The notes below the pieces were generated by a model that worked only from the letters and a program-made list of their open reading frames with translations, was not told the DNA's origin and made no database searches. Shown here in pieces: positions 9,905-48,719 of a DNA stretch of 64,000 bases (position 1 is its first letter; each line of letters begins with the position of its first letter). The DNA is taken from positions 378,758,001 to 378,822,000 of the forward strand of contig NW_027362767.1 in assembly GCF_046119375.1 (NCBI RefSeq), read 5' to 3'. This stretch comes from Phyllobates terribilis. Lineage: Eukaryota. Position numbers and translations under genes: made by a program.

Positions 9905-11022
9905 ATTTACCATCAGTGTATCATCAGTATTTGGTCAGTGTCAGTATGTATCATCAGTATTTGGTCAATTTGGTCAGTGTCAGTATGTATCATCAGTATT
10001 TACCATCAGTGTTTCATCAGTATTTGGTCAGTGTCAGTATGTATCATCAGTATTTACCATCAGTGTTTCATCAGTATTTGGTCAGTGTCAGTATTTATCA
10101 TCAGTATTTGGCCAGTGTCAGTATGTATCATCAGTATTTACCATCAGTGTTTCATCAGTATTTGGTCAGTGTGAGTATTTACCATCAGTGTTTCATCAGT
10201 ATTCTGGTCAGTGTCAGTATTTATCATCAGTGCTTCATCAGTATTTGGTCAGTGTCAGTATTTACCATCAGTGTTTCATCAGTATTTGGTCAGTGTCAGT
10301 ATTTATCATCAGTATTTGGCCAGTGTCAGTATGTATCATCAGTATTTACCATCAGTGTTTCATCAGTATTTGGTCAGTGTCAGTATTTATCATCAGTATT
10401 TGGCCAGTGTCAGTATGTATCATCAATATTTACCATCAGTGTTTCATCAGTATTTGGTCAGTGTGAGTATTTACCATCAGAGTTTCATCAGTATTCTGGT
10501 CAGTGTCAGTATTTATCATCAGTGCTTCATCAGTATTTGGTCAGTGTCAGTATTTACCATCAGTGTTTCATCAGTATTTGGTCAGTGTCAGTATTTATCA
10601 TCAGTATTTGGCCAGTGTCAGTATGTATCATCAGTATTTACCATCAGTGTTTCATCAGTATTTGGTCAGGGTCAGTATTTACCATCAGTGTTTCATCAGT
10701 ATTTGGTCAGTGTCAGTATTTACCATCAGTGTTTCACCAGTATTTGGTCAGTGTCATTATTTACCATCAGTGTTTCACCAGTATTTGGTCAGTGTCCATA
10801 TTTACCATCAGTGTTTCATCAGTATTTGGTCAGTATTTACCATCAGTGTTTCACCAGTATTTGGTCAGTGTCAGTATTTACCATCAGTGTTTCATCAGTA
10901 TTTGGTCAGTGTCAGTATTTACCATCAGTATACCATCAGTATTTGGTCAGTGTCAGTATTTACCATCAGTATTTGGTCAGTGTCTGTGTATCATCAGTAT
11001 TTTGTCAGTATTTATCATCAGT
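9905..11022. repeat. Modular CATCAGT satellite (30-, 13- and 11-nt modules; 292-bp higher-order duplication)
   Basis: Modules catcagtatttggtcagtgtcagtatNtaN, catcagtatttac and catcagtgttt. The rare variants gtgagt and tattctgg recur exactly 292 bp apart (10171/10463; 10204/10496). Confidence 0.93.
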
Positions 11023-11327
11023 GAATAAATAAATTGGAAAGCCTCTCCGATACATTATAAATGTAAAAATGGACGTCACACTGATGACACACGGACGGCA
11101 ATGTGAGCTGTCTGTGATTTTTCACAGACTCAAAAACTTGTGTGGCTAATTTTGATCTATGATGTTGATAAAAAAAATCAGAAATCTTGATGATTTTTGC
11201 TCGGACACACGGTCCACAAAAAAACAAGGACAAGTGAATAGCCCTATAGACTATAATGGGTAAATGTTCTATCCGTGAAAATCATGGCTACAGCATGTAT
11301 GTGAAAAACGGATGTCTGAATGAGGCC
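11023..11327. mobile_element. Right end of a Harbinger-type non-autonomous element that hosts the satellite
   Basis: Ends gatgtctgaatgaggcc followed by TTA. The subterminal sequence matches 15370-15416. Left end not found. Confidence 0.5.
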
Positions 11328-12209
11328 TTACTGAGTAGCTATCTCCGAAAACTGCACTGGCATGACAGTCTTCTTTCTTCCTGAGGACTAATTTGCATAC
11401 TTTATCGAAACCTGAAAGACAACAACAGCATCAACATCAAACCCCTCCATTGTATTCTGAGCACAGTCACTTGTAGGGATCCAGATAGAGCAGACGTGGG
11501 GGGTTGTTGTGCGGCCGCAGGTGGTGGAGAGCTCTGATGCCAAAAATTCGGTAATGGGTGTAATACACAAACTCTGTAACTTCAAGTCAGTACTGGAAGT
11601 AGTATCAGCTCTGTGGGTTCAGTGTATGTATGAAGCAGGTTCTTGGCTTTTCTGTCCTTATATGTGTACAAACGCTCTGAATGTATGTGTGTGGTTATAC
11701 AGCTGGAGGGGAAAATGTTGACTTTTTTTAATCTAGTTCCCTGCAAAAAATATTTTTTTTGTAAAAGATTTGCATTATTAATTTTGCCATATTGTACCAA
11801 AAAGTGTCTGAACGTTATACACCTTTATAGTGTCATTTATTACTATTTGCTCAGAAGTTTCTATACTCAACCCTGTTTAGGTGATGATGGGAATCAATAT
11901 CTATCATTATCTATATATCCAAAAAAAGATGAAGACAGCACTCCAAAAGTTCCGATTTTTAGTGGCTTATTGACCCATTGTAATAAAGTGACTTTTCGTT
12001 CCAAGTGTGAAACTTTTTCAACTCACTTGGAACAAAACGTCACCTTATTACAATGGTTCAATAAACCACAAAAAACTGGACTTTTGGAGTGCTGTCTACA
12101 TCTTTTTTGAATACGTATGTATTGAGGTTTGGTTTTGCCTGGTAGGCTTTGCACCCACTAATATATATATTTTTTGCCTTTGCTGGTGCTGCACTTCTAT
12201 TTTTGTAAA

Positions 12210-40626: not shown

Positions 40627-41212
40627 TTCTGACCAGCTGAGAATAGAGAAGACAAGGATGATTCACTTGTACACAGATACTCTAATAATAATTTTGGCTA
40701 ACAGTCATCTCTCTAATACAAATGGAAGCTTGGCTCAGTGGAGAAACCCTGTGTTCTCTATGAGAGAGACCCCTCTGATGGCGGCTTATCTCCCAAAGAA
40801 CTGAAGACTTTTGGCCAATACCGGCAGATTTTGTCAACTTTAGTCTAATGTTTACGGGAGACTTAGGGTTAATTTGGCTCTTATGAAATTTGCCTAAGGC
40901 ATCATTCAGATGGCTGTAATCAAGACGCATTTTTGAATCCAAATCATGGCTGCATGTCTTGTCTAATAATATATATATTAGTACAGACCAAAAGTTTGGA
41001 CACACCTTCTCATTTAAAGATTTGTCTGTATTTTCATGACTTTGAAAATTGTACATTCACACTGAAGGCATCAAAACTATGAATTTACACATGTGGAATT
41101 ATATACTTAACAAAAAAGTGTGAAACAACTGAAAATAGGGTCATTCCACATCAAGTGGACCAGTTTTAAAAATCGTCCCCACTCGACCTTCTCCGATTTT
41201 GTTGAAAATTTA

Positions 41213-42273
41213 CAGTGCCTACAAGTAGTATTCAACCCCCTGCAGAATTAGCTGGTTTGATAAGATGCAAATAAGTTAGAGCCTTCAAACTGCAAACGAG
41301 AGTAGGTTTTATGAACAGAAACATAAATCTTACAAACCAAAAGTTATGTTGCTCAGTTGAATTTTATTAAATTTTAAACATAAAAGTGTGGGTCAATTAT
41401 TATACAACCCCTATGTTTAATATTTTGTGGAATAACCCTTGTTTGCAATTACAGCTAATAATCGTCTTTTATAAGAAACAGCCCCACAGCATGATGCTGC
41501 CACCACCATGCTTGACTGTAGGGATGGTATTCTTGGGGTCGTATGCAGTGCCATCCAGTCTCCAAACGTCACGTGTGTGGTTGGCACCAAAGGTCTCGAT
41601 CTTGGTCTCATCAGACCATAGAACCTTGAACCAGTCTGTCTCAGAGTCCTCCAAGTGATCATGAGCAAACTGTAGACGAGCCTTGACATGACGCTTTGAA
41701 AGTAAAGGTACCTTACGGGCTCGTCTGGAACGGAGACCATTGCGGTGGAGTACGTTACTTATGGTATTGACTGAAACCAATGTCCCCACTGCCATGAGAT
41801 CTTCCCGGAGCACCTTCCTTGTTGTCCTTGGGTTAGCCTTGACTCTTCGGACAAGCCTGGCCTCGGCACGGGAGGACACTTTCAAAGGCTGTCCTGGCCG
41901 TGGAAGGCTAACAGTAGTTCCATAAGCCTTCCACTTACGGATGATGCTCCCAACAGTGGAGACAGGTAGGCCCAACTCCTTGGAAAGGGTTTTGTACCCC
42001 TTGCCAGCCTTGTGACCCTCCACGATCTTGTCTCTGATGGCCTTGGAATGCTCCTTTGTCTTTCCCATGTTGACCATGTCTGAGTGCTGTTCACAAGTTT
42101 GGGGAGGGTCTTAAATAGTCAGAAAAGGCTGGCAAAAGAGATCTTTAATCCACACATGTGAAGCTCATTATTCTTGGTGCCTGAACTACTTCTTAATACT
42201 TTTGGGGGACCAAACAGAATTCTTGTGGTTTGAGGGGTTGAATAATAAATGACACTCTGAATTAACTTTTAAC

Positions 42274-42312
<39 letters not shown>

Positions 42313-42431
42313 CTGCAGTGCATTTCCCACTTCCAGGCTGATCTACAGTACAAATGTCACAATGCCAAGTTAATTCCGCATGTGTCAACCAGCTAAATCT
42401 GCAGGGGGTTGAATACTACTTGTAGGCACTG
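41213..42431 (-). mobile_element. Internally deleted Tc1 transposon inserted at a TA in the left TIR of the Sola2 element
   Basis: TA TSDs; cagtgcctacaagtagtattcaaccccctgcaga at both ends; ORF 41469-42077 MGKTKEHSK...WSDETK...MLWGCF jumps to the C-terminal YKRRLLAVIANKG, so the second and third catalytic residues are deleted. Confidence 0.93.
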
Positions 42432-43245
42432 TATAAGGATGTACATGTATGTTTGAAAAGAGGTTCTGTAAATTTTTAGGGCCAGATCTCAAATACATTG
42501 GGCACTGTTGACCTTTCACTGGAGGTTCCACCAAGCCTGCGGCTTCAGCTAAGAGGATTTTGCAAACTTTGGCACATAGCCATTAGAGTTCTATACTGGC
42601 TATGATGCTGAAATTTGGCATACTAGCTCAACTTTTGCTGCTAAACACGATAAAATTATTACCGGCTATGACAAAACAATATTTCGGCCGCAATTTTGTG
42701 TCAAAGTAGCTTGTAAAACGCGTCGCATAAAATTTATGCCAAACTTTGCCCATATATAACTCAAGACCAAAAACCAATAGTAACTGGTGCTTTGCCCTGT
42801 ACACCAAACATCTACATGACTTTGCATTGCTGCAATATCACGGTCAAACCATATGTATTTGTGGAAATATTCACACCCACATATGATGAAAAACTTAAAA
42901 AAAAACGAATTTTACCTATTTTTAGGTCAAATTTCTCAAAAAGGGTACCCCTAAAATATATTAATTCTGATATCATTAGAAAGAGCACATTTTTCTCTAC
43001 AAGGATCATTGTTTTTTTTTTTGGAGTCTCTCAGTTTAAGAAAAGAAAAATGCCACTGAACATCGTGTTATTTATGCGCGTAATGCATTGATTTTGTGTT
43101 TGATTTTCAGATTCTTATCACATGTTACAGAGTTGTATTGTTGCTAGCAATGTCTATTATAATCAAAAACCTATAAACCTTTTTGTTTATGAAAAGTTAT
43201 TGACTATTGTTACATTTTAATGCATATATTATTTATTTTTTAGCG

Positions 43246-45583
43246 ATGGAGAATGAAATTGATGAAGAATCGGCCCAGTGCTCTATCGGCCTTGCGAACA
43301 TTTCGAAGTGCCACCTTAAGACATTCACCCATAGCAAGGATGAGTTGAAATTGTTCACAAGCTTTGGATTGGATGAACAGAAATTGCTGCGTCGATGAGT
43401 GGGACTAAATTTTGACGAACATTCACAAATCTGTTTACACCATGAAGCTTCATTCTTGACCAAATATGAGCATTTGCAAAAATCGTGTTGCAATCCTTTT
43501 GGGAAGAAAGGTCATAACACCAAAAAGAATTTGCGAGCTATCAATTTGTTAGCAGCTGACCAGTTGAATGAATTTACAAAGAATGATGTGAAGCCTGGCC
43601 AGAAGATGTGTGCATCATGTCGAAAAGAATTTGCTAACAGGAAAAAATCAGCTGATCCAGTTTCCTCTGAATGAGATCCAGATGGAATGGAATGTTCTCC
43701 TGAAAGTCTAAATTCAAGCTTAACATCCATTGGCATCTCTCCTCTGAAATATCCACGGGTAAGCCAGCGGGATTCACTTGGATATGCAAGGAGAAAGATA
43801 AGCCAGGTACAAAATGCATTTTCTAGCAAGATTGCTTCAATTGGAGGGCTTGAGTCGAAAGACATTGAGCAAACAAAAACAGCACAGTGCAAAATGTGTC
43901 TGGATTACAATCACCTTTTGGCAGATTTGAAGCAAAAGCTGCAGGTGTCCAGTCAGGCAGAAAAGGTCCAAATCTTGACATTGGCACCTAAAAGTTGGTC
44001 CATTAAGGCTATATCAGACGAATTCGGTGTCTCAAAAAATAGTCGCAAAAGCGACTATTACTGAGCAATATGAGGGAAATGTTTGTTGCCTATCGGGATC
44101 GGAATTTCCCTGAAATTGGATTTTCCAAGTTTTGTGAGCTTCGGCCAAAGTGGTGCGTAACCGTTGGATCTGCTGGAACACATTCCATTTGTGTGTGTAC
44201 CATTCACCAAAATGTCAAACTAATGCTTGCAGCATGCCCAATCAATGATGACTACAAAGAGCTCATATGCAAAATGGTCTGTGGAATTGAATCCAAGGAC
44301 TGTATGCTTGGCCGTTGTGATAAATGCCTGGGTCCTGAAGTTTTAAAAGAATTTCTAGTCAATGTGTTTGTCAACAGTGACCCTGAAGATATTATTGAGT
44401 TCAAGCAACGGATTCACACTGATCGAGACACGCTTGATGCCAAACAACTGACTATAGAAGATTTCATTGAAGAATTAGTTTTGAAAATTTCTAAACTTTG
44501 TAGCCATCACTACATTGCCAAGCATCAAAGTAGCTATTTGAAATCGTTGAAGGAAAATCTGAGACCTGGAGAGCTGGTGATCCTTATGGACTTTGCTGAA
44601 AATTACTCATTTATTGTTCAAGATGCCATTCAAGGTTTCCACTGGGAAAATAGTCAAGCTACAGTACACCCATTTGTAATTTACTTCAAGGAGTTAAATG
44701 GTGAAGCTGCGCAGAACATCAGCTTGTGCATAATCAGTGATTGCTCACGACATGACACAGTTGCAGTCCACACTTTCTTAACAGTAATTGTGGAGTATCT
44801 CAAGACTCTCATCTATGAGAGTCGTCATATCCACTACTTCAGCGATGGATCTGCAGCCCAGTACAAAAATTTCAAAAATGTTCTCAACTTGTGCCACCAC
44901 AATGCTGATTTCAATATCAGCGCTGAATGGAATTTTTTTGGTGCCAGTCATGGAAAGTCGCCCTGTGATGGGATTGGAGGGACAGCAAAGAGGTTGGCAG
45001 CTCGTGCCAGTCTTCAACGCCCAACTGAAAACCAAATACTGACCCCGGTGGATTTATTCAACTTTTGCAACGAGCAACTGCATGGAATCAAATTTTTTTT
45101 TGTTCCAAAAGAAAAAATTGACGAAATACGGGTAAGTTCAAGAGGAAAGGTTCAAAGATGGACATACAATTGCTGGAACAAGAGAAAATCACCAGTTTGT
45201 GCCAATTGATGACAAAAAGATTCGCATTTCAAGGGTGTCAAATGACCCATCATCTTTCATTGCCCAAGTAGATAGATCTGTCATATCAGAAATGCCTTTT
45301 GTGCCAATTGCAAACCTCCAGCCAGGGCAATACATTGCCTGCATTTACGATAGGAACTATTTCTGAAATTTCAGTCGACGACCATGATGCATTAATAAAT
45401 TTTATGCATCCTCATGGACCAGCTAGCTTCTTTCACTGGCCTGTGAGAAATGATACATGCTGGATTCCCGAGCAGTCAATCATTGCAATAATTCCAGCAC
45501 CAGCTGCAACAGCAATGGGCCGACAATACAGCTTCTCTGAACCGATTATGTTGCAAATTCAGCAACAATTCCAGACCACTTAG
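43246..45583 (+). pseudogene. Sola2-type DDD transposase pseudogene with an N-terminal Cys/His domain
   Basis: Stops at 43396 and 43672, a deletion/frameshift near 44040 (EFGVSK joined to QKRLLLSNMRE), frameshifts near 45135 and 45360. Motifs IGFSKFCELRPKWC, MDFAENY, FSDGSAAQYKN, SHGKSPCDGIGG. Splice acceptor just before the ATG. Confidence 0.88.
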
Positions 45584-46599
45584 ACTGAACATTATGGCTT
45601 GGGAACCAACAAAAGATACCCAATATTAGGCTTGGGATCCTAGGCAAAGACACCCACCCTCAGGCTACGGAACCTGCGATAAAGAGACCGCCCGCGGCTG
45701 GCCTTGCACGGCTATCGGCCATGGCTCCTAGGCGATGGGGCTGCCAATTCTCGAAAGACAGCATTATTACAATTCTTAATAGAATTATAATACCAATTCT
45801 TAGGGAATTGGTTGCGGTATAACCACCATGGACCAACGCAAGGGTTTGAATAGTGCAGTTACCATTCATTGCGTATTAATAAATAACACCATGTTCAGTG
45901 GCATTTTTCTTTTCTTAAACTGAGGGACTCCAAAAAAAAAAAAAAAACAATGATCCTTGTAGAGAAAAATGTGCTCTTACTAATGATATCAGAATTAATA
46001 TATTTTAGGGGTACCCTTTTTGAGAAATTTGACCTAAAAATAGGTAAAATTCGTTTTTTTTTAAGTTTTTCATCATATGTGGGTGTGAATATTTCCACAA
46101 ATACATATGGTTTGACCGTGATATTGCAGCAATGCAAAGTCATGTAGATGTTTGGTGTACAGGGCAAAGCACCAGTTACTATTGGTTTTTGGTCTTGAGT
46201 TATATATGAGCAAAGTTTGGCATAAATTTTATGCGACACGTTTCACAAGCTACTTTGACACAAAATTGCGGCCGAAATATTGTTTTGTCATAGCCGGTAA
46301 TAATTTTATCGTGTTTAGCAGCAAAAGTTGAGCTAGTATGCCAAATTTCAGCATCATAGCCAGTATAGAACTCTAATGGCTATGTGCCAAAGTTTGCAAA
46401 ATCCTCTTAGCTGAAGCCGTAGGCTTGGTGGAACCTCCAGTGAAAGGTCAACAGTGCCCAATGTATTTGAGATCTGGCCCTAAAAATTAATAGAACCTCT
46501 TTTCAAACATACATGTACATCCTTATAAATTTTCAGCAAAATCGGAGAAGGTCGAGTGGGGACCACTGGTCCGCTTGACATGGAATGACTCAATATGTC

Positions 46600-47662
46600 T
46601 TATATTCTAGGTTCTTCAAAGTAGCCACCTTTTGCTTTGATGACTGCTTTGCACACTCTTGGCATTCTCTTGATGAGCTTCAAGAGGTAGTCACCGGAAA
46701 TGGTCTTCCAACAATCTTGAAGGAGTTCCCAGAGATGCTTAGCACTTGTTGGCCCTTTTGCCTTCACTCTGCGGTCCAGCTCACCCCAAACCATCTCGAT
46801 TGGGTTCAGGTCTGGTGACTGTGGAGGCCAGGTCATCTGGCGTAGCACCCCATCACTCTCCCTCTTGGTCAAATAGCCCTTACACAGCCTGGAGGTGTGT
46901 TTGGGGTCATGGTCCTGTTGAAAAATAAATGATGGTCCAACTAAACACAAACCGGATGGAATAGCATGCTGCTGCAAGATGCTGTGGTAGCCAGGCTGGT
47001 TCAGTATGCCTTCAATTTTGAATAAATCCCCAACAGTGTCACCAGCAAAGCACCCCCACACCATCACACCTCCTCCTCCATGCTTCACGGTGGGAACCAG
47101 GCATGTAGAGTCCATCCGTTCACCTTTTCTGCGTCGCACAAAGACACGGTGGTTGGAACCAAAGATCTCAAATTTGGACTCATCAGACCAAAGCACAGAT
47201 TTCCACTGGTCTAATGTCCATTCCTTGTGTTCTTTAGCCCAAACAAGTCTCTTCTGCTTGTTGCCTGTCCTTAGCAGTGGTTTCCTAGCAGCTATTTTAC
47301 CATGAAGGCCTGCTGCACAAAGTCTCCTCTTAACAGTTGTTGTAGAGATGTGTCTGCTGCTAGAACTCTGTGTGGCATTGACCTGGTCTCTAATCTGAGC
47401 TGCTGTTAACCTGCGATTTCTGAGGCTGGTGACTCGGATAAACTTATCCTCAGAAGCACAGGTGACTCTTGGTCTTCCTTTCCTGGGACGGTCCTCATGT
47501 GAGCCAGTTTCTTTGTAGCGCTTGATGGTTTTTGCAACTGCACTTGGGGACACATTCAAAGTTTGCCCAATTTTTCAGACTGACTGACCTTAATTTCTTA
47601 AAGTAGTGATGGCCACTCGTTTTTCTTTACTTAGAATTTGTATTATGGCAAGAAAAAAGCAG
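46600..47662 (-). pseudogene. DD38E transposase; body open, but the start codon is removed by a 28-bp inversion
   Basis: ORF 46600-47559 is near-identical to 30842-31893; ATGGCAAGAAAAAAGCAG appears on the opposite strand at 47645-47662. Confidence 0.88.
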
Positions 47663-48719
47663 CTAACAGTCTATTCAGTAGGACTATCAGCTGTGTATCC
47701 ACCAGACTTCTGCACAACACAACTGATGGTCCCAACCCCATTTATAAGGCAAGAAATCCCACTTATTAAACCTGACAGGGCACACCTGTGAAGTGAAAAC
47801 CATTTCCGGTGACTACCTCTTGAAGCTCATCAAGAGAATGCCAAGAGTGTGCAAAGCAGTCATCAAAGCAAAAGGTGGCTACTTTGAAGAACCTGGAATA
47901 TAAGACATATTTTCAGTTGTTTCACACTTTTTTGTTAAGTATATAATTCCACATGTGTTAATTCATAGTTTTGATGCCTTCAGTGTGAATGTACAATTTT
48001 CAAAGTCATGAAAATACAGAAAAATCTTTAAATGAGGTGTGTCCAAACTTTTGGTCTGTACTGTATGTGTATATATTAGTTTCCTATGATAAAACTGGAT
48101 CACTGTTGTGCCCATGCACCAACCATCCCAATCACACATCGGCTTTTCACTGATAGACAATAATTGTGCATGTCCTAAGGCCTGTTAACATGCCCGTGTT
48201 TTTTTTTTTTTTTTTGGAGGGGAGGGGGAGGGGGGGGGGGTCTGGACCAAGTGTCCCAAAAACAAACAAAAGAAAAAATGTTGACATGTCCATTTCTGAT
48301 CCAATTTGTGGACCAAACTTGCCCATTTAAGTTAAACTCACATGCAACATTTTAATGGTTTCTGAAGGGATCCTGCAACTTTTGAAAAGAGGCTCAAAAG
48401 AGCAAAACAAATAATTGAGTCGGTGGAAATTCATCAAACACTGCACTTATTTTGATAGATTTAGCAAAAATCCCACTGAAGAAAAAGAACAATAAAAAAA
48501 ACAACAACAAAATGCAAATGATGAATCTTTCTAACACAGCCTGCTGGGGGATGTAGTTCAGCAATATGTGCAAAGTACGGCATGCTGGGAGTTGTAGTTT
48601 TTGCAGCCGGACTATTATAATAGTAACAGAAGGATCAGTACATTCCAAATGGGGTGTGGGAGGAAGAACTGCACAGAGAGGATGGGCAGCAGCGCCATGA
48701 CTGGGGGGCACATCCTCAC

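What the first reader, a model, noticed from the sequence alone, without database searches (positions are those of the whole stretch)
43279..43620. Sola2 transposase N-terminus looks homologous to the N-terminal domain of vertebrate ARL14EP (possible transposase capture into a SETDB1 cofactor)
Seen: reading through the CGA>TGA stop gives CSIG..CH..ICLHH-x10-LQKSCCNPF-x7-KKNL-x20-PGQKMCASC. Recalled human ARL14EP/C11orf46 has CSVG..CH..ICFHH-x10-LQKSCCDPF-x7-KKNL-x20-PGWKLCPKC, with identical spacing over about 65 residues. Established: ARL14EP associates with the SETDB1/ATF7IP H3K9 methylation machinery through its C-terminal Cys-rich domain; as I recall, invertebrate orthologues share mainly that C-terminal part. 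Inference: the vertebrate N-terminal domain is a captured Sola2 metal-binding, possibly DNA-binding, module fused to a silencing cofactor. I do not know of this link being described.
Basis: partly seen in the sequence, partly recalled or inferred. Interest (0 to 1): 0.85.

Follow-up and report, generated by a model that had tools for sequence, protein, structure and literature searches.

The report
Transposase zinc domain captured by ARL14EP
A decayed jumping gene in this window encodes a zinc-binding head domain that is clearly related to the uncharacterised front half of ARL14EP, a partner of the gene-silencing enzyme SETDB1, which suggests that bony vertebrates once took this domain from such a transposon.

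Summary

**The element.** Window 43246-43674 encodes the N-terminal Cys/His domain of a dead DNA transposon. The element spans 42436-46523 and has about 640-bp inverted ends. Its reading frame carries 2 stops, at least 3 frameshifts and one deletion.

**The homology.**
- A profile built only from transposon copies matches ARL14EP residues 1-130 at E 1e-43 to 1e-48.
- A profile built only from ARL14EP matches window 43399-43671 at E 9.5e-19.
- An AlphaFold model of the transposase domain superposes on ARL14EP models (TM 0.83, rmsd 1.8 Å).

**The direction of transfer.**
- ARL14EP N-domains form one clade (100/99) that follows the vertebrate tree. Their sisters are transposase-bearing sequences.
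- The domain is seen in tetrapods, coelacanth and early-branching ray-finned fishes.
- It was not found in shark ARL14EP. Arthropod relatives (106-134 aa) are too short to hold it.
- In bowfin it is a single alternative first exon.

**Extra finding.** Ray-finned fishes also splice a canonical THAP domain onto the same SETDB1-binding module.

**What stays inferred.** The direction of transfer, the "Sola2" label (motif-level check only) and any DNA-binding role are inferred, not shown. No paper found describes the link. The scan noted the same resemblance on another copy in this genome (s1-209075).

The parts
42436..46523 (+). Whole non-autonomous (dead) Sola2-type DNA transposon, termini AGGATGTACATG...CATGTACATCCT
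   Evidence: Inverted repeat I1/I4. The terminal 25-mer occurs exactly twice in the window, at the two ends. Junctions were read.
42432..43075 (.). Left terminal inverted repeat (about 640 bp), including the flanking TATA at 42432-42435
   Evidence: arms 42432-43022 / 45937-46527 are 99% complementary. Arms 43009-43075 / 45879-45945 are 96% complementary.
45879..46527 (.). Right terminal inverted repeat, including the flanking TATA at 46524-46527
   Evidence: TATA on both sides is compatible with a 4-bp AT-rich TSD, but the count is ambiguous because the target is a palindrome (GAAAATT-TATA-AATTTTC).
43246..43674 (+). Coding region of the N-terminal Cys/His domain (ATG at 43246). In-frame TGA at 43396-43398 and TGA at 43672-43674.
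   Evidence: Translation. tblastn of intact transposase P0124 aa 16-272 onto 43264-44034, frame 1, 44% identity.
43279..43620 (+). Core of the finding, from the first conserved Cys (CSIG) to the last (CASC). All 11 family-conserved Cys/His positions are present.
   Evidence: The ARL14EP-only HMM gives E 9.5e-19 on 43399-43671.
43675..44064 (+). Linker plus helix-turn-helix region of the transposase, same frame as the N-domain. This part was not captured by ARL14EP.
   Evidence: Weak Pfam HTH_23 hit at E 0.0047. The same region in P0124 gives E 4.5e-4. Match to P0124.
44046..45209 (+). Catalytic core (frame 3) with motifs LMDFAEN, YFSDG and SHGKSPCDG. About 63 codons are missing between 44034 and 44046.
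   Evidence: 379-aa ORF. 1,263 homologues, best E 2.9e-140. 62% identity to P0124 aa 336-703. Motifs compared with Sola2_DFa-2 and Sola2_PPa-1.
45136..45583 (+). C-terminal region of the transposase, broken by two more frameshifts (near 45136-45173 and 45350-45363)
   Evidence: tblastn pieces in frames 1 and 2. ORF 45299-45583.

Best explanation
**The element in the window.** Window 42436-46523 is a dead copy of a cut-and-paste DNA transposon of the Sola2 type. Its transposase begins with a domain of about 130 residues that carries 11 conserved Cys/His positions. That is enough for two zinc sites. One site is a C-x10-C-x40-C-x2-H lobe. The other is a CC...H...C-x2-C lobe followed by a long helix. 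In the transposon this head domain, together with the helix-turn-helix that follows it, most likely recognises the element's own ends (inferred).

**The capture.** The same domain forms residues 1-130 of ARL14EP in bony vertebrates. The best-supported history is a single capture before ray-finned and lobe-finned fishes split. The 5' part of a transposase ORF, with its own ATG, became an alternative first coding exon. That exon splices onto the older SETDB1-binding ARF7EP_C module. The domain has been kept under purifying selection since then.

**Likely role in ARL14EP.** The domain most likely serves as the targeting or assembly end (DNA, chromatin or self-association) of a SETDB1 adaptor. This last step is inference.
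For: **Homology**
- phmmer of the window piece finds ARL14EP at E 2.7e-9 and 6.7e-6. The second hit carries Pfam ARF7EP_C at E 4.6e-34.
- A transposon-only HMM hits 20 or more ARL14EP orthologues end to end at E 1e-43 to 1e-48.
- An ARL14EP-only HMM hits the window at E 9.5e-19.
- The AF2 model of the transposase domain (pLDDT 93) matches ARL14EP of cow, human, mouse and rat. TM is 0.83, rmsd 1.8-1.9 Å over 121 residues, probability 1.00. These are the only significant Swiss-Prot matches.

**Single origin**
- The ARL14EP clade has support 100/99 and its internal order follows the vertebrate tree.
- Its starred sisters are P0188 and P0248 (97/81). P0248 carries the transposase core at E 2.7e-41.
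- P0188 is 42-46% identical to ARL14EP but only 31-35% identical to other transposon copies.

**Direction**
- Full-length transposases of 820-882 aa carry the domain.
- Transposon copies occur in crayfish, stick insect and caecilians. The fold occurs in many invertebrate proteins.
- Shark ARL14EP is 154-158 aa, and no N-domain exon lies within 38 kb of the bamboo-shark locus.
- Arthropod ARF7EP_C clusters have 106- and 134-aa representatives.

**Exon capture**
- In bowfin locus L001 the whole domain is one exon (10001 to about 10435) with its own ATG, roughly 500 bp upstream of the shared exons.

**Selection**
- N-domain identity between tetrapods or coelacanth and ray-finned fishes is 55-66%.

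**Sola2 type**
- The motifs LMDFxEN, (F/W)SDG and HGKSxxD are shared with the published Sola2_DFa-2 and Sola2_PPa-1 transposases. Sola2 elements have AT-rich 4-bp TSDs.
Against: - The tree is unrooted, so topology alone cannot exclude transfer from host to transposon.
- The shark locus has a 1.75-kb assembly gap in the relevant intron. Jawless fishes were not examined.
- Invertebrate ARL14EP sequences were not retrieved. Only the lengths of cluster representatives are known.
- Many family members of 650 aa or less found lack the domain. These may be truncated gene calls or real variants.
- The Sola2 assignment was checked by eye against two distant Sola2 proteins, not by a scored comparison with Repbase.
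- Published work attributes histone H3 binding to regions of C11orf46 outside the Cys-rich domain (PMC6739341).
Confidence: 0.85

Rival explanations
1. Reverse transfer. The domain arose in the ARL14EP gene of an early bony vertebrate. A transposon then picked it up and spread, partly by horizontal transfer, to arthropods, cnidarians and others.
For: The unrooted tree allows a root on the ARL14EP stem. The transposon rows nearest to ARL14EP (P0188, P0248, P0191) would then simply be the earliest transposon branches.
Against: This needs an unexplained de novo origin of a two-zinc domain in ARL14EP. It also needs spread of a vertebrate-derived transposon across phyla. Transposon N-domains are far more divergent (median end branch 0.65) than the whole ARL14EP clade. 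The fold occurs in many invertebrate proteins of other architectures. In ARL14EP the domain is an optional, self-starting first exon, which is the expected footprint of a captured transposase 5' end.
Confidence: 0.06
2. Common descent from a third source. Both ARL14EP and this transposase family took the domain independently from a wider family of zinc-finger modules. There was no direct Sola2-to-ARL14EP step.
For: afdb_clusters finds the fold (TM 0.55-0.66) in proteins that also carry C2H2, BEN, reverse-transcriptase, THAP or DUF7869 domains. The module is therefore mobile among architectures.
Against: Those matches are much weaker (14-21% identity) than ARL14EP versus transposase (33-46%). 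ARL14EP groups inside the transposase-linked sequences with starred support, next to a row that carries the Sola2-type core.
Confidence: 0.08
3. Chance or convergent resemblance of Cys/His-rich motifs.
For: Short Cys/His motifs recur in unrelated zinc fingers. The piece upstream of the stop is not significant alone (E 1.7).
Against: Reciprocal profile E-values are 1e-19 to 1e-48 over about 125 gap-free columns. The structural match has TM 0.83.
Confidence: 0.01

Closest known systems
Host-transposase fusion genes formed by exon capture (Cosby et al., bioRxiv 10.1101/2020.05.07.082677), such as SETMAR, KRABINER and the THAP-containing genes
   Same: A transposase N-terminal, presumably DNA-binding, domain is spliced onto a host chromatin-regulator module. 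It is kept under selection and is orthologous across a large vertebrate clade. The capture took the form of an alternative exon.
   Different: The donor is a Sola2-type element. The preprint's main text mentions neither Sola, ARL14EP nor SETDB1. The partner module is a small SETDB1-MBD-binding Cys-rich domain rather than KRAB, SCAN or SET. The event is old, at least at the bony-vertebrate ancestor.
Sola2 DNA transposons (Bao, Jurka and Kapitonov 2009; Bao and Jurka 2013, PMC3627910)
   Same: Terminal inverted repeats. A flank compatible with a 4-bp AT-rich TSD. Catalytic motifs MDFxEN, SDG and HGKSxxD, as in Sola2_DFa-2 and Sola2_PPa-1. Metazoan distribution including Hydra, echinoderms and fishes.
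   Different: The TIRs here are very long (about 640 bp). The copy is dead. No scored comparison with Repbase Sola2 consensus sequences could be run.
THAP zinc finger (Pfam PF05485), the DNA-binding domain of P-element transposase and THAP1-11
   Different: There is no profile similarity (hhalign probability 0.75%) and no AVPTIF box. The first Cys pair is spaced 10 apart, not 2-4.
ZAD (zinc-finger-associated domain) of insect C2H2 proteins and vertebrate ZNF276
   Different: Z lies below the tool's caution line of about 8. No sequence similarity was tested or seen. ZAD is a dimerisation module, which would suggest self-association rather than DNA binding.

Membership tests
ARL14EP N-terminal domain (homologous family) | Significant reciprocal profile match over the whole domain | tested here: met
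   The transposon-only HMM against ARL14EP gives E 1e-43 to 1e-48 over profile 3-130. The ARL14EP-only HMM against window 43399-43671 gives E 9.5e-19.
ARL14EP N-terminal domain (homologous family) | Same fold | tested here: met
   The AF2 model of P0124:16-149 against AFDB ARL14EP (Q5EA92, Q8N8R7, Q8BIX3, Q5FVK8) gives TM 0.83, rmsd 1.8-5.2 Å and probability 1.00. Both sides are predictions.
ARL14EP N-terminal domain (homologous family) | Conserved Cys/His ligand set | tested here: met
   C6, C17, H18, C58, H60, H61, C76, C77, H83, C117 and C120 are conserved in 83 sequences covering both groups. All are present in the window copy.
ARL14EP gene (orthologue) | C-terminal ARF7EP_C (PF14949) SETDB1-binding module | tested here: not met
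   The window protein continues into an HTH and a transposase core. It is a transposase, not an ARL14EP gene.
Sola2 transposon | Sequence similarity of the catalytic core to named Sola2 transposases | tested here: inconclusive
   Only a motif-level comparison by eye was made, against Sola2_DFa-2 and Sola2_PPa-1 printed in the supplement of PMC3627910. The matches are VLMDFKEN vs ILMDFAEN, FWSDGAKHFK vs YFSDGSAAQYK, and YHGKSDVD vs SHGKSPCD. Pfam has no model for this core.
Sola2 transposon | 4-bp AT-rich target-site duplication | tested here: inconclusive
   TATA flanks both ends. The insertion site is a palindrome and a Tc1-like element abuts the left end, so 2, 4 or 6 bp all fit.
Sola2 transposon | Terminal inverted repeats | tested here: met
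   Arms of 591 + 67 nt, 96-99% complementary.
Host-transposase fusion gene (for ARL14EP) | The host module is older than, and occurs without, the transposase-derived domain | tested here: met
   Shark ARL14EP is 154-198 aa without the domain. No N-domain exon lies in bamboo-shark locus L003, apart from a 1.75-kb gap. Arthropod ARF7EP_C clusters have 106- and 134-aa representatives. Invertebrate orthologues ARLE-14 and CG14464 are reported in PMC13108219.
Host-transposase fusion gene (for ARL14EP) | The captured domain is orthologous and under constraint across species | tested here: met
   One clade with support 100/99 that follows the species tree. Identity is 55-66% across roughly the bony-vertebrate divergence.
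Host-transposase fusion gene (for ARL14EP) | The domain is encoded as a discrete exon joined by splicing | tested here: met
   In Amia locus L001 a single exon (10001 to about 10435) encodes aa 1 to about 145. The shared exons are 10939-11064 and 11386-11613. The alternative THAP exons lie upstream.
THAP domain (PF05485) | Profile match to THAP | tested here: not met
   Pfam finds no hit on the window pieces or on P0124:1-160. hhalign against fish ARL14EP THAP domains gives probability 0.75%.
ZAD domain | Structural match of the second lobe | tested here: inconclusive

The most novel reading that the evidence does not exclude
The ARL14EP N-domain is a working sequence-specific DNA-binding (or self-associating) module inherited from a Sola2 transposase. 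It steers SETDB1/ATF7IP to defined loci. Ray-finned fishes alternatively splice a THAP domain onto the same SETDB1-binding module. Taken together, ARL14EP would be a modular adaptor that has twice been armed with transposon-type zinc fingers. It would also be the first trace of the Sola superfamily in the human genome.
Probability: 0.35. Interest if true: 0.85.

Novelty: new member of a known kind. Interest (0 to 1): 0.72.

Why it matters
**Why ARL14EP matters.** ARL14EP/C11orf46 is a SETDB1 cofactor linked to neurodevelopmental disease. Only its C-terminal Cys-rich domain has a known role and a solved structure (8hfp; PMC13108219; PMC6739341). Its front half, which is half of the protein, is unannotated.

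**What the finding offers.** If that half is a transposase head domain, there is a concrete hypothesis to test: that it is the DNA or chromatin targeting end, or the dimerising end, of the adaptor. The finding would also add the Sola superfamily to the short list of transposons that left protein-coding traces in tetrapods. In Kojima's 2018 table (PMC5753468) Sola does not appear to be marked as leaving such a trace in human. This reading rests on the text formatting of that table.

**Other consequences.**
- The parallel THAP isoform in fishes supports the idea that this locus repeatedly recruits DNA-binding heads.
- Automatic annotation labels transposon fragments in crayfish, sterlet and spider as 'ARL14 effector protein(-like)'. 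This finding explains why.

Tried and rejected
- **Pfam.** Scans of the window pieces gave nothing meaningful.
- **PDB sequence search.** The 91-aa piece found nothing.
- **ESM Atlas.** The feature search gave only unnamed clusters at 0.89.
- **Word-indexed search.** A search with P0124 region 15-150 found only the query itself, so one search was wasted.
- **THAP membership.** It was rejected by hhalign.
- **Foldseek against PDB.** No significant match.
- **Locus look-ups.** Attempts for catshark, elephant shark, the Xenopus short form and Danio gave no DNA. The Xenopus locus has 27.9 kb masked, so absence of the exon there is only provisional.
- **Organism of P0188.** It could not be learned.
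- **Sola papers.** The original Sola paper and Yuan and Wessler 2011 are not held.
- **Literature on the link.** Searches for ARL14EP or C11orf46 together with transposase, THAP, domesticated or DNA-binding found no paper on this link.

Full report
**1. What is in the window**

The motifs are CSIG at 43279, KCH, ICLHH, LQKSCCNPF, KKNL and PGQKMCASC, ending at 43620. The frame is interrupted by TGA at 43396-43398 and closed by TGA at 43672-43674.

The same frame runs on to 44064. A 379-aa ORF follows in another frame (44070-45209), and then a 94-aa ORF (45299-45583).

Laying an intact 853-aa relative (P0124) on the window shows how the gene is broken:

| P0124 residues | Window coordinates | Note |
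|---|---|---|
| 16-272 | 43264-44034 | 44% identity, two in-frame stops |
| about 273-335 | missing | internal deletion |
| 336-703 | 44046-45173 | new frame, 62% identity |
| 696-771 and 772-812 | 45136-45363 and 45350-45472 | two further frameshifts |

The gene sits between inverted repeats 42432-43075 and 45879-46527, which are 96-99% complementary. The terminal 25-mer occurs only at these two ends. TATA flanks both ends.

The element lies at the centre of a palindromic older element. A Tc1-like element abuts its left end. The duplication length (2, 4 or 6 bp) therefore cannot be fixed from this copy.

The locus is thus a dead copy of a cut-and-paste transposon.

**2. Which transposon**

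The core has more than 1,200 relatives with no Pfam domain. The named ones come from Hydra, crinoids, a sea cucumber and a beetle.

The supplement of Bao and Jurka 2013 prints two bona fide Sola2 transposases. Sola2_DFa-2 contains VLMDFKEN, FWSDGAKHFK and YHGKSDVD. These sit where the window protein has ILMDFAEN, YFSDGSAAQYK and SHGKSPCD. Sola2_PPa-1 shows related motifs, including YHGKSECD.

That paper also states that Sola2 elements have AT-rich 4-bp TSDs. I therefore accept 'Sola2-type'. The check is by eye against two distant members, not a scored comparison with Repbase.

**3. Is the N-domain related to ARL14EP?**

Yes, on four lines of evidence.

- *Single-sequence search.* phmmer of the 91-aa piece (43399-43671) against 1.8 billion representatives gave 269 hits. 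Most are transposon proteins or fragments. Four carry or adjoin the ARF7EP_C domain and are named ARL14 effector protein, from duck, owl monkey, sturgeon and a mormyrid fish.
- *Transposon profile.* An HMM built only from 70 transposon N-domains hits every full-length tetrapod, coelacanth, bichir, sturgeon, gar, bowfin, eel, tarpon and mormyrid ARL14EP. The match runs from residue 1 to about 129 at E 1e-43 to 1e-48.
- *ARL14EP profile.* An HMM built only from 14 ARL14EP N-domains picks out window piece 43399-43671 at E 9.5e-19 among 1,699 six-frame pieces.
- *Alignment.* The alignment needs almost no gaps over about 130 columns. Eleven Cys/His positions are conserved across both groups.

**4. 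Structure**

The transposase domain (P0124:16-149, with an 83-sequence alignment) folds with mean pLDDT 93 and pTM 0.83.

In Swiss-Prot AlphaFold models the only significant matches are ARL14EP of cow, human, mouse and rat. TM is 0.83 and rmsd 1.8 Å over 121 residues for the rodent models.

Both scores lie below the tool's caution line. hhalign against THAP finds nothing. The fold is best called a two-lobed zinc module with no solved counterpart. Only the C-terminal 75 residues of ARL14EP have been solved (8hfp).

**5. History**

*Tree.* In a careful ML tree of 97 N-domains the ARL14EP sequences form one clade (UFBoot 100, SH-aLRT 99). The internal order of that clade follows the vertebrate tree. 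The clade is joined with starred support to P0188 and P0248 (97/81), and then to P0191 (98/88).
- P0248 carries the transposase core at E 2.7e-41.
- P0188 continues into the transposase linker region.
- P0188 is 42-46% identical to ARL14EP but only 31-35% identical to other transposon copies. It shares the PGWKLC variant of the last motif.

*Distribution of ARL14EP N-termini.* Three kinds are seen:

| N-terminus | Where seen |
|---|---|
| Sola2-type domain | Tetrapods, coelacanth, bichir, sturgeon, gar, bowfin isoform X2, elopomorphs, mormyrids |
| Canonical THAP domain (Pfam E about 1e-16) | Gar, bowfin and bony-tongue isoform X1, some eels, all other teleosts listed |
| Short N-terminus, no domain | Several frogs (143 aa), sharks, a ray and a chimaera (154-198 aa) |

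*Loci.*
- The bamboo-shark locus (38 kb) shows no N-domain or THAP exon, apart from a 1.75-kb gap.
- The readable part of the Xenopus tropicalis locus shows none either.
- Arthropod ARF7EP_C clusters have 106- and 134-aa representatives, too short to hold the domain.
- Invertebrate orthologues that bind SETDB1/MET-2 are reported in the literature (PMC13108219).

*Transposon copies elsewhere.* Copies with the domain occur in a crayfish, a stick insect and caecilians. The fold recurs in many invertebrate proteins.

*Exon structure.* In the bowfin locus the entire domain is one exon with its own ATG (L001 10001 to about 10435). It lies about 500 bp upstream of the two shared exons. The three THAP exons lie 5-8 kb further upstream. 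This is the layout expected if the 5' end of a transposase ORF was trapped as an alternative first exon.

*Constraint.* The domain has stayed 55-66% identical between tetrapods or coelacanth and ray-finned fishes. The C-terminal module is 75-83% identical over the same span.

*What the tree cannot show.* The tree has no root, so the direction rests on distribution and gene structure. I put transposon-to-host at about 0.85.

**6. How it probably works**

In the transposon, an N-terminal zinc module followed by a helix-turn-helix is the usual end-recognition part of a transposase. This is inference from general knowledge. The median net charge of transposon N-domains is +6.

ARL14EP kept only the zinc module, not the HTH or the catalytic core. 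Published work shows two things:
- The C-terminal Cys-rich domain binds the SETDB1 MBD.
- C11orf46 lacking that domain still binds histone H3 (PMC6739341; PMC13108219).

The N-domain is therefore the candidate for the chromatin or DNA contact. Given the ZAD-like lobe, it could instead mediate dimerisation. None of this is tested.

**7. Novelty**

Full-text searches found no paper linking ARL14EP or C11orf46 to a transposase, to THAP or to domestication. The transposase-capture preprint mentions neither ARL14EP nor Sola.

Databases show unnoticed traces of the link:
- Transposon fragments are named 'ARL14 effector protein(-like)' in crayfish, sterlet and other species.
- Fish ARL14EP entries are named 'THAP-type domain-containing protein'.

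The kind of event, a host-transposase fusion, is well known. This would be a new and old example from a superfamily not previously credited with one, in a disease-linked SETDB1 cofactor.

The scan's first stage noted the same resemblance on another copy in this genome (s1-209075). That is not independent evidence.

Noticed in passing
L001:2479-4813 (Amia ocellicauda ARL14EP locus); proteins P0278, P0286, P0344, P0391: Ray-finned-fish ARL14EP has a canonical THAP domain as an alternative N-terminus (Pfam E about 1e-16; closest solved relatives are THAP1 and THAP2). In most teleosts it is the only N-terminus. It is encoded by three exons upstream of the Sola2-type exon. No paper found mentions it.
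   Followed up: partly
P0128 (Rhinatrema bivittatum XP_029470548.1), residues 98-142 and 377-511: A caecilian gene model named SPINDOC-like joins a Spin-doc zinc finger (Pfam E 1.6e-6) to a Sola2-type N-domain. That N-domain groups with a caecilian transposon copy (P0134). This is either a second capture by another chromatin regulator or a chimeric gene model.
   Followed up: partly
P0122, P0133; AFDB A0A444V1X4, A0A4Y2A5B6: Transposon fragments (N-domain plus transposase linker, no ARF7EP_C) are named 'ARL14 effector protein' or '-like' by automatic annotation in crayfish, sterlet and another invertebrate. These are misannotations caused by this homology.
   Followed up: yes
window 41009-41212 and 46526-48036; 41211-42433; 46592-47911: Nested transposons. 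A palindromic outer element was hit at its centre by the Sola2-type element. Two Tc1-like elements are also present. One of them (46600-47559, minus strand) has an uninterrupted 319-aa transposase ORF.
   Followed up: no
P0314, P0297, P0299, P0304, P0309, P0311, P0319; L004: Several frogs and a caecilian have 143-150-aa ARL14EP forms without the N-domain, whereas Spea and Ascaphus keep it. No N-domain exon is visible in the readable part of the Xenopus tropicalis locus. This points to lineage-specific loss, though 27.9 kb of that locus is masked.
   Followed up: partly
afdb_clusters hits of model m53889471519c: The same fold (TM 0.55-0.66, 14-21% identity) heads many invertebrate proteins that also carry C2H2, BEN, reverse-transcriptase, THAP or DUF7869 domains. 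The module seems to be widely shuffled among mobile-element proteins.
   Followed up: no
P0221, residues 61-323 and 328-464: A gene model joins Fringe and CHGN glycosyltransferase domains to a Sola2-type N-domain. This is probably a transposon insertion merged into a gene model.
   Followed up: no
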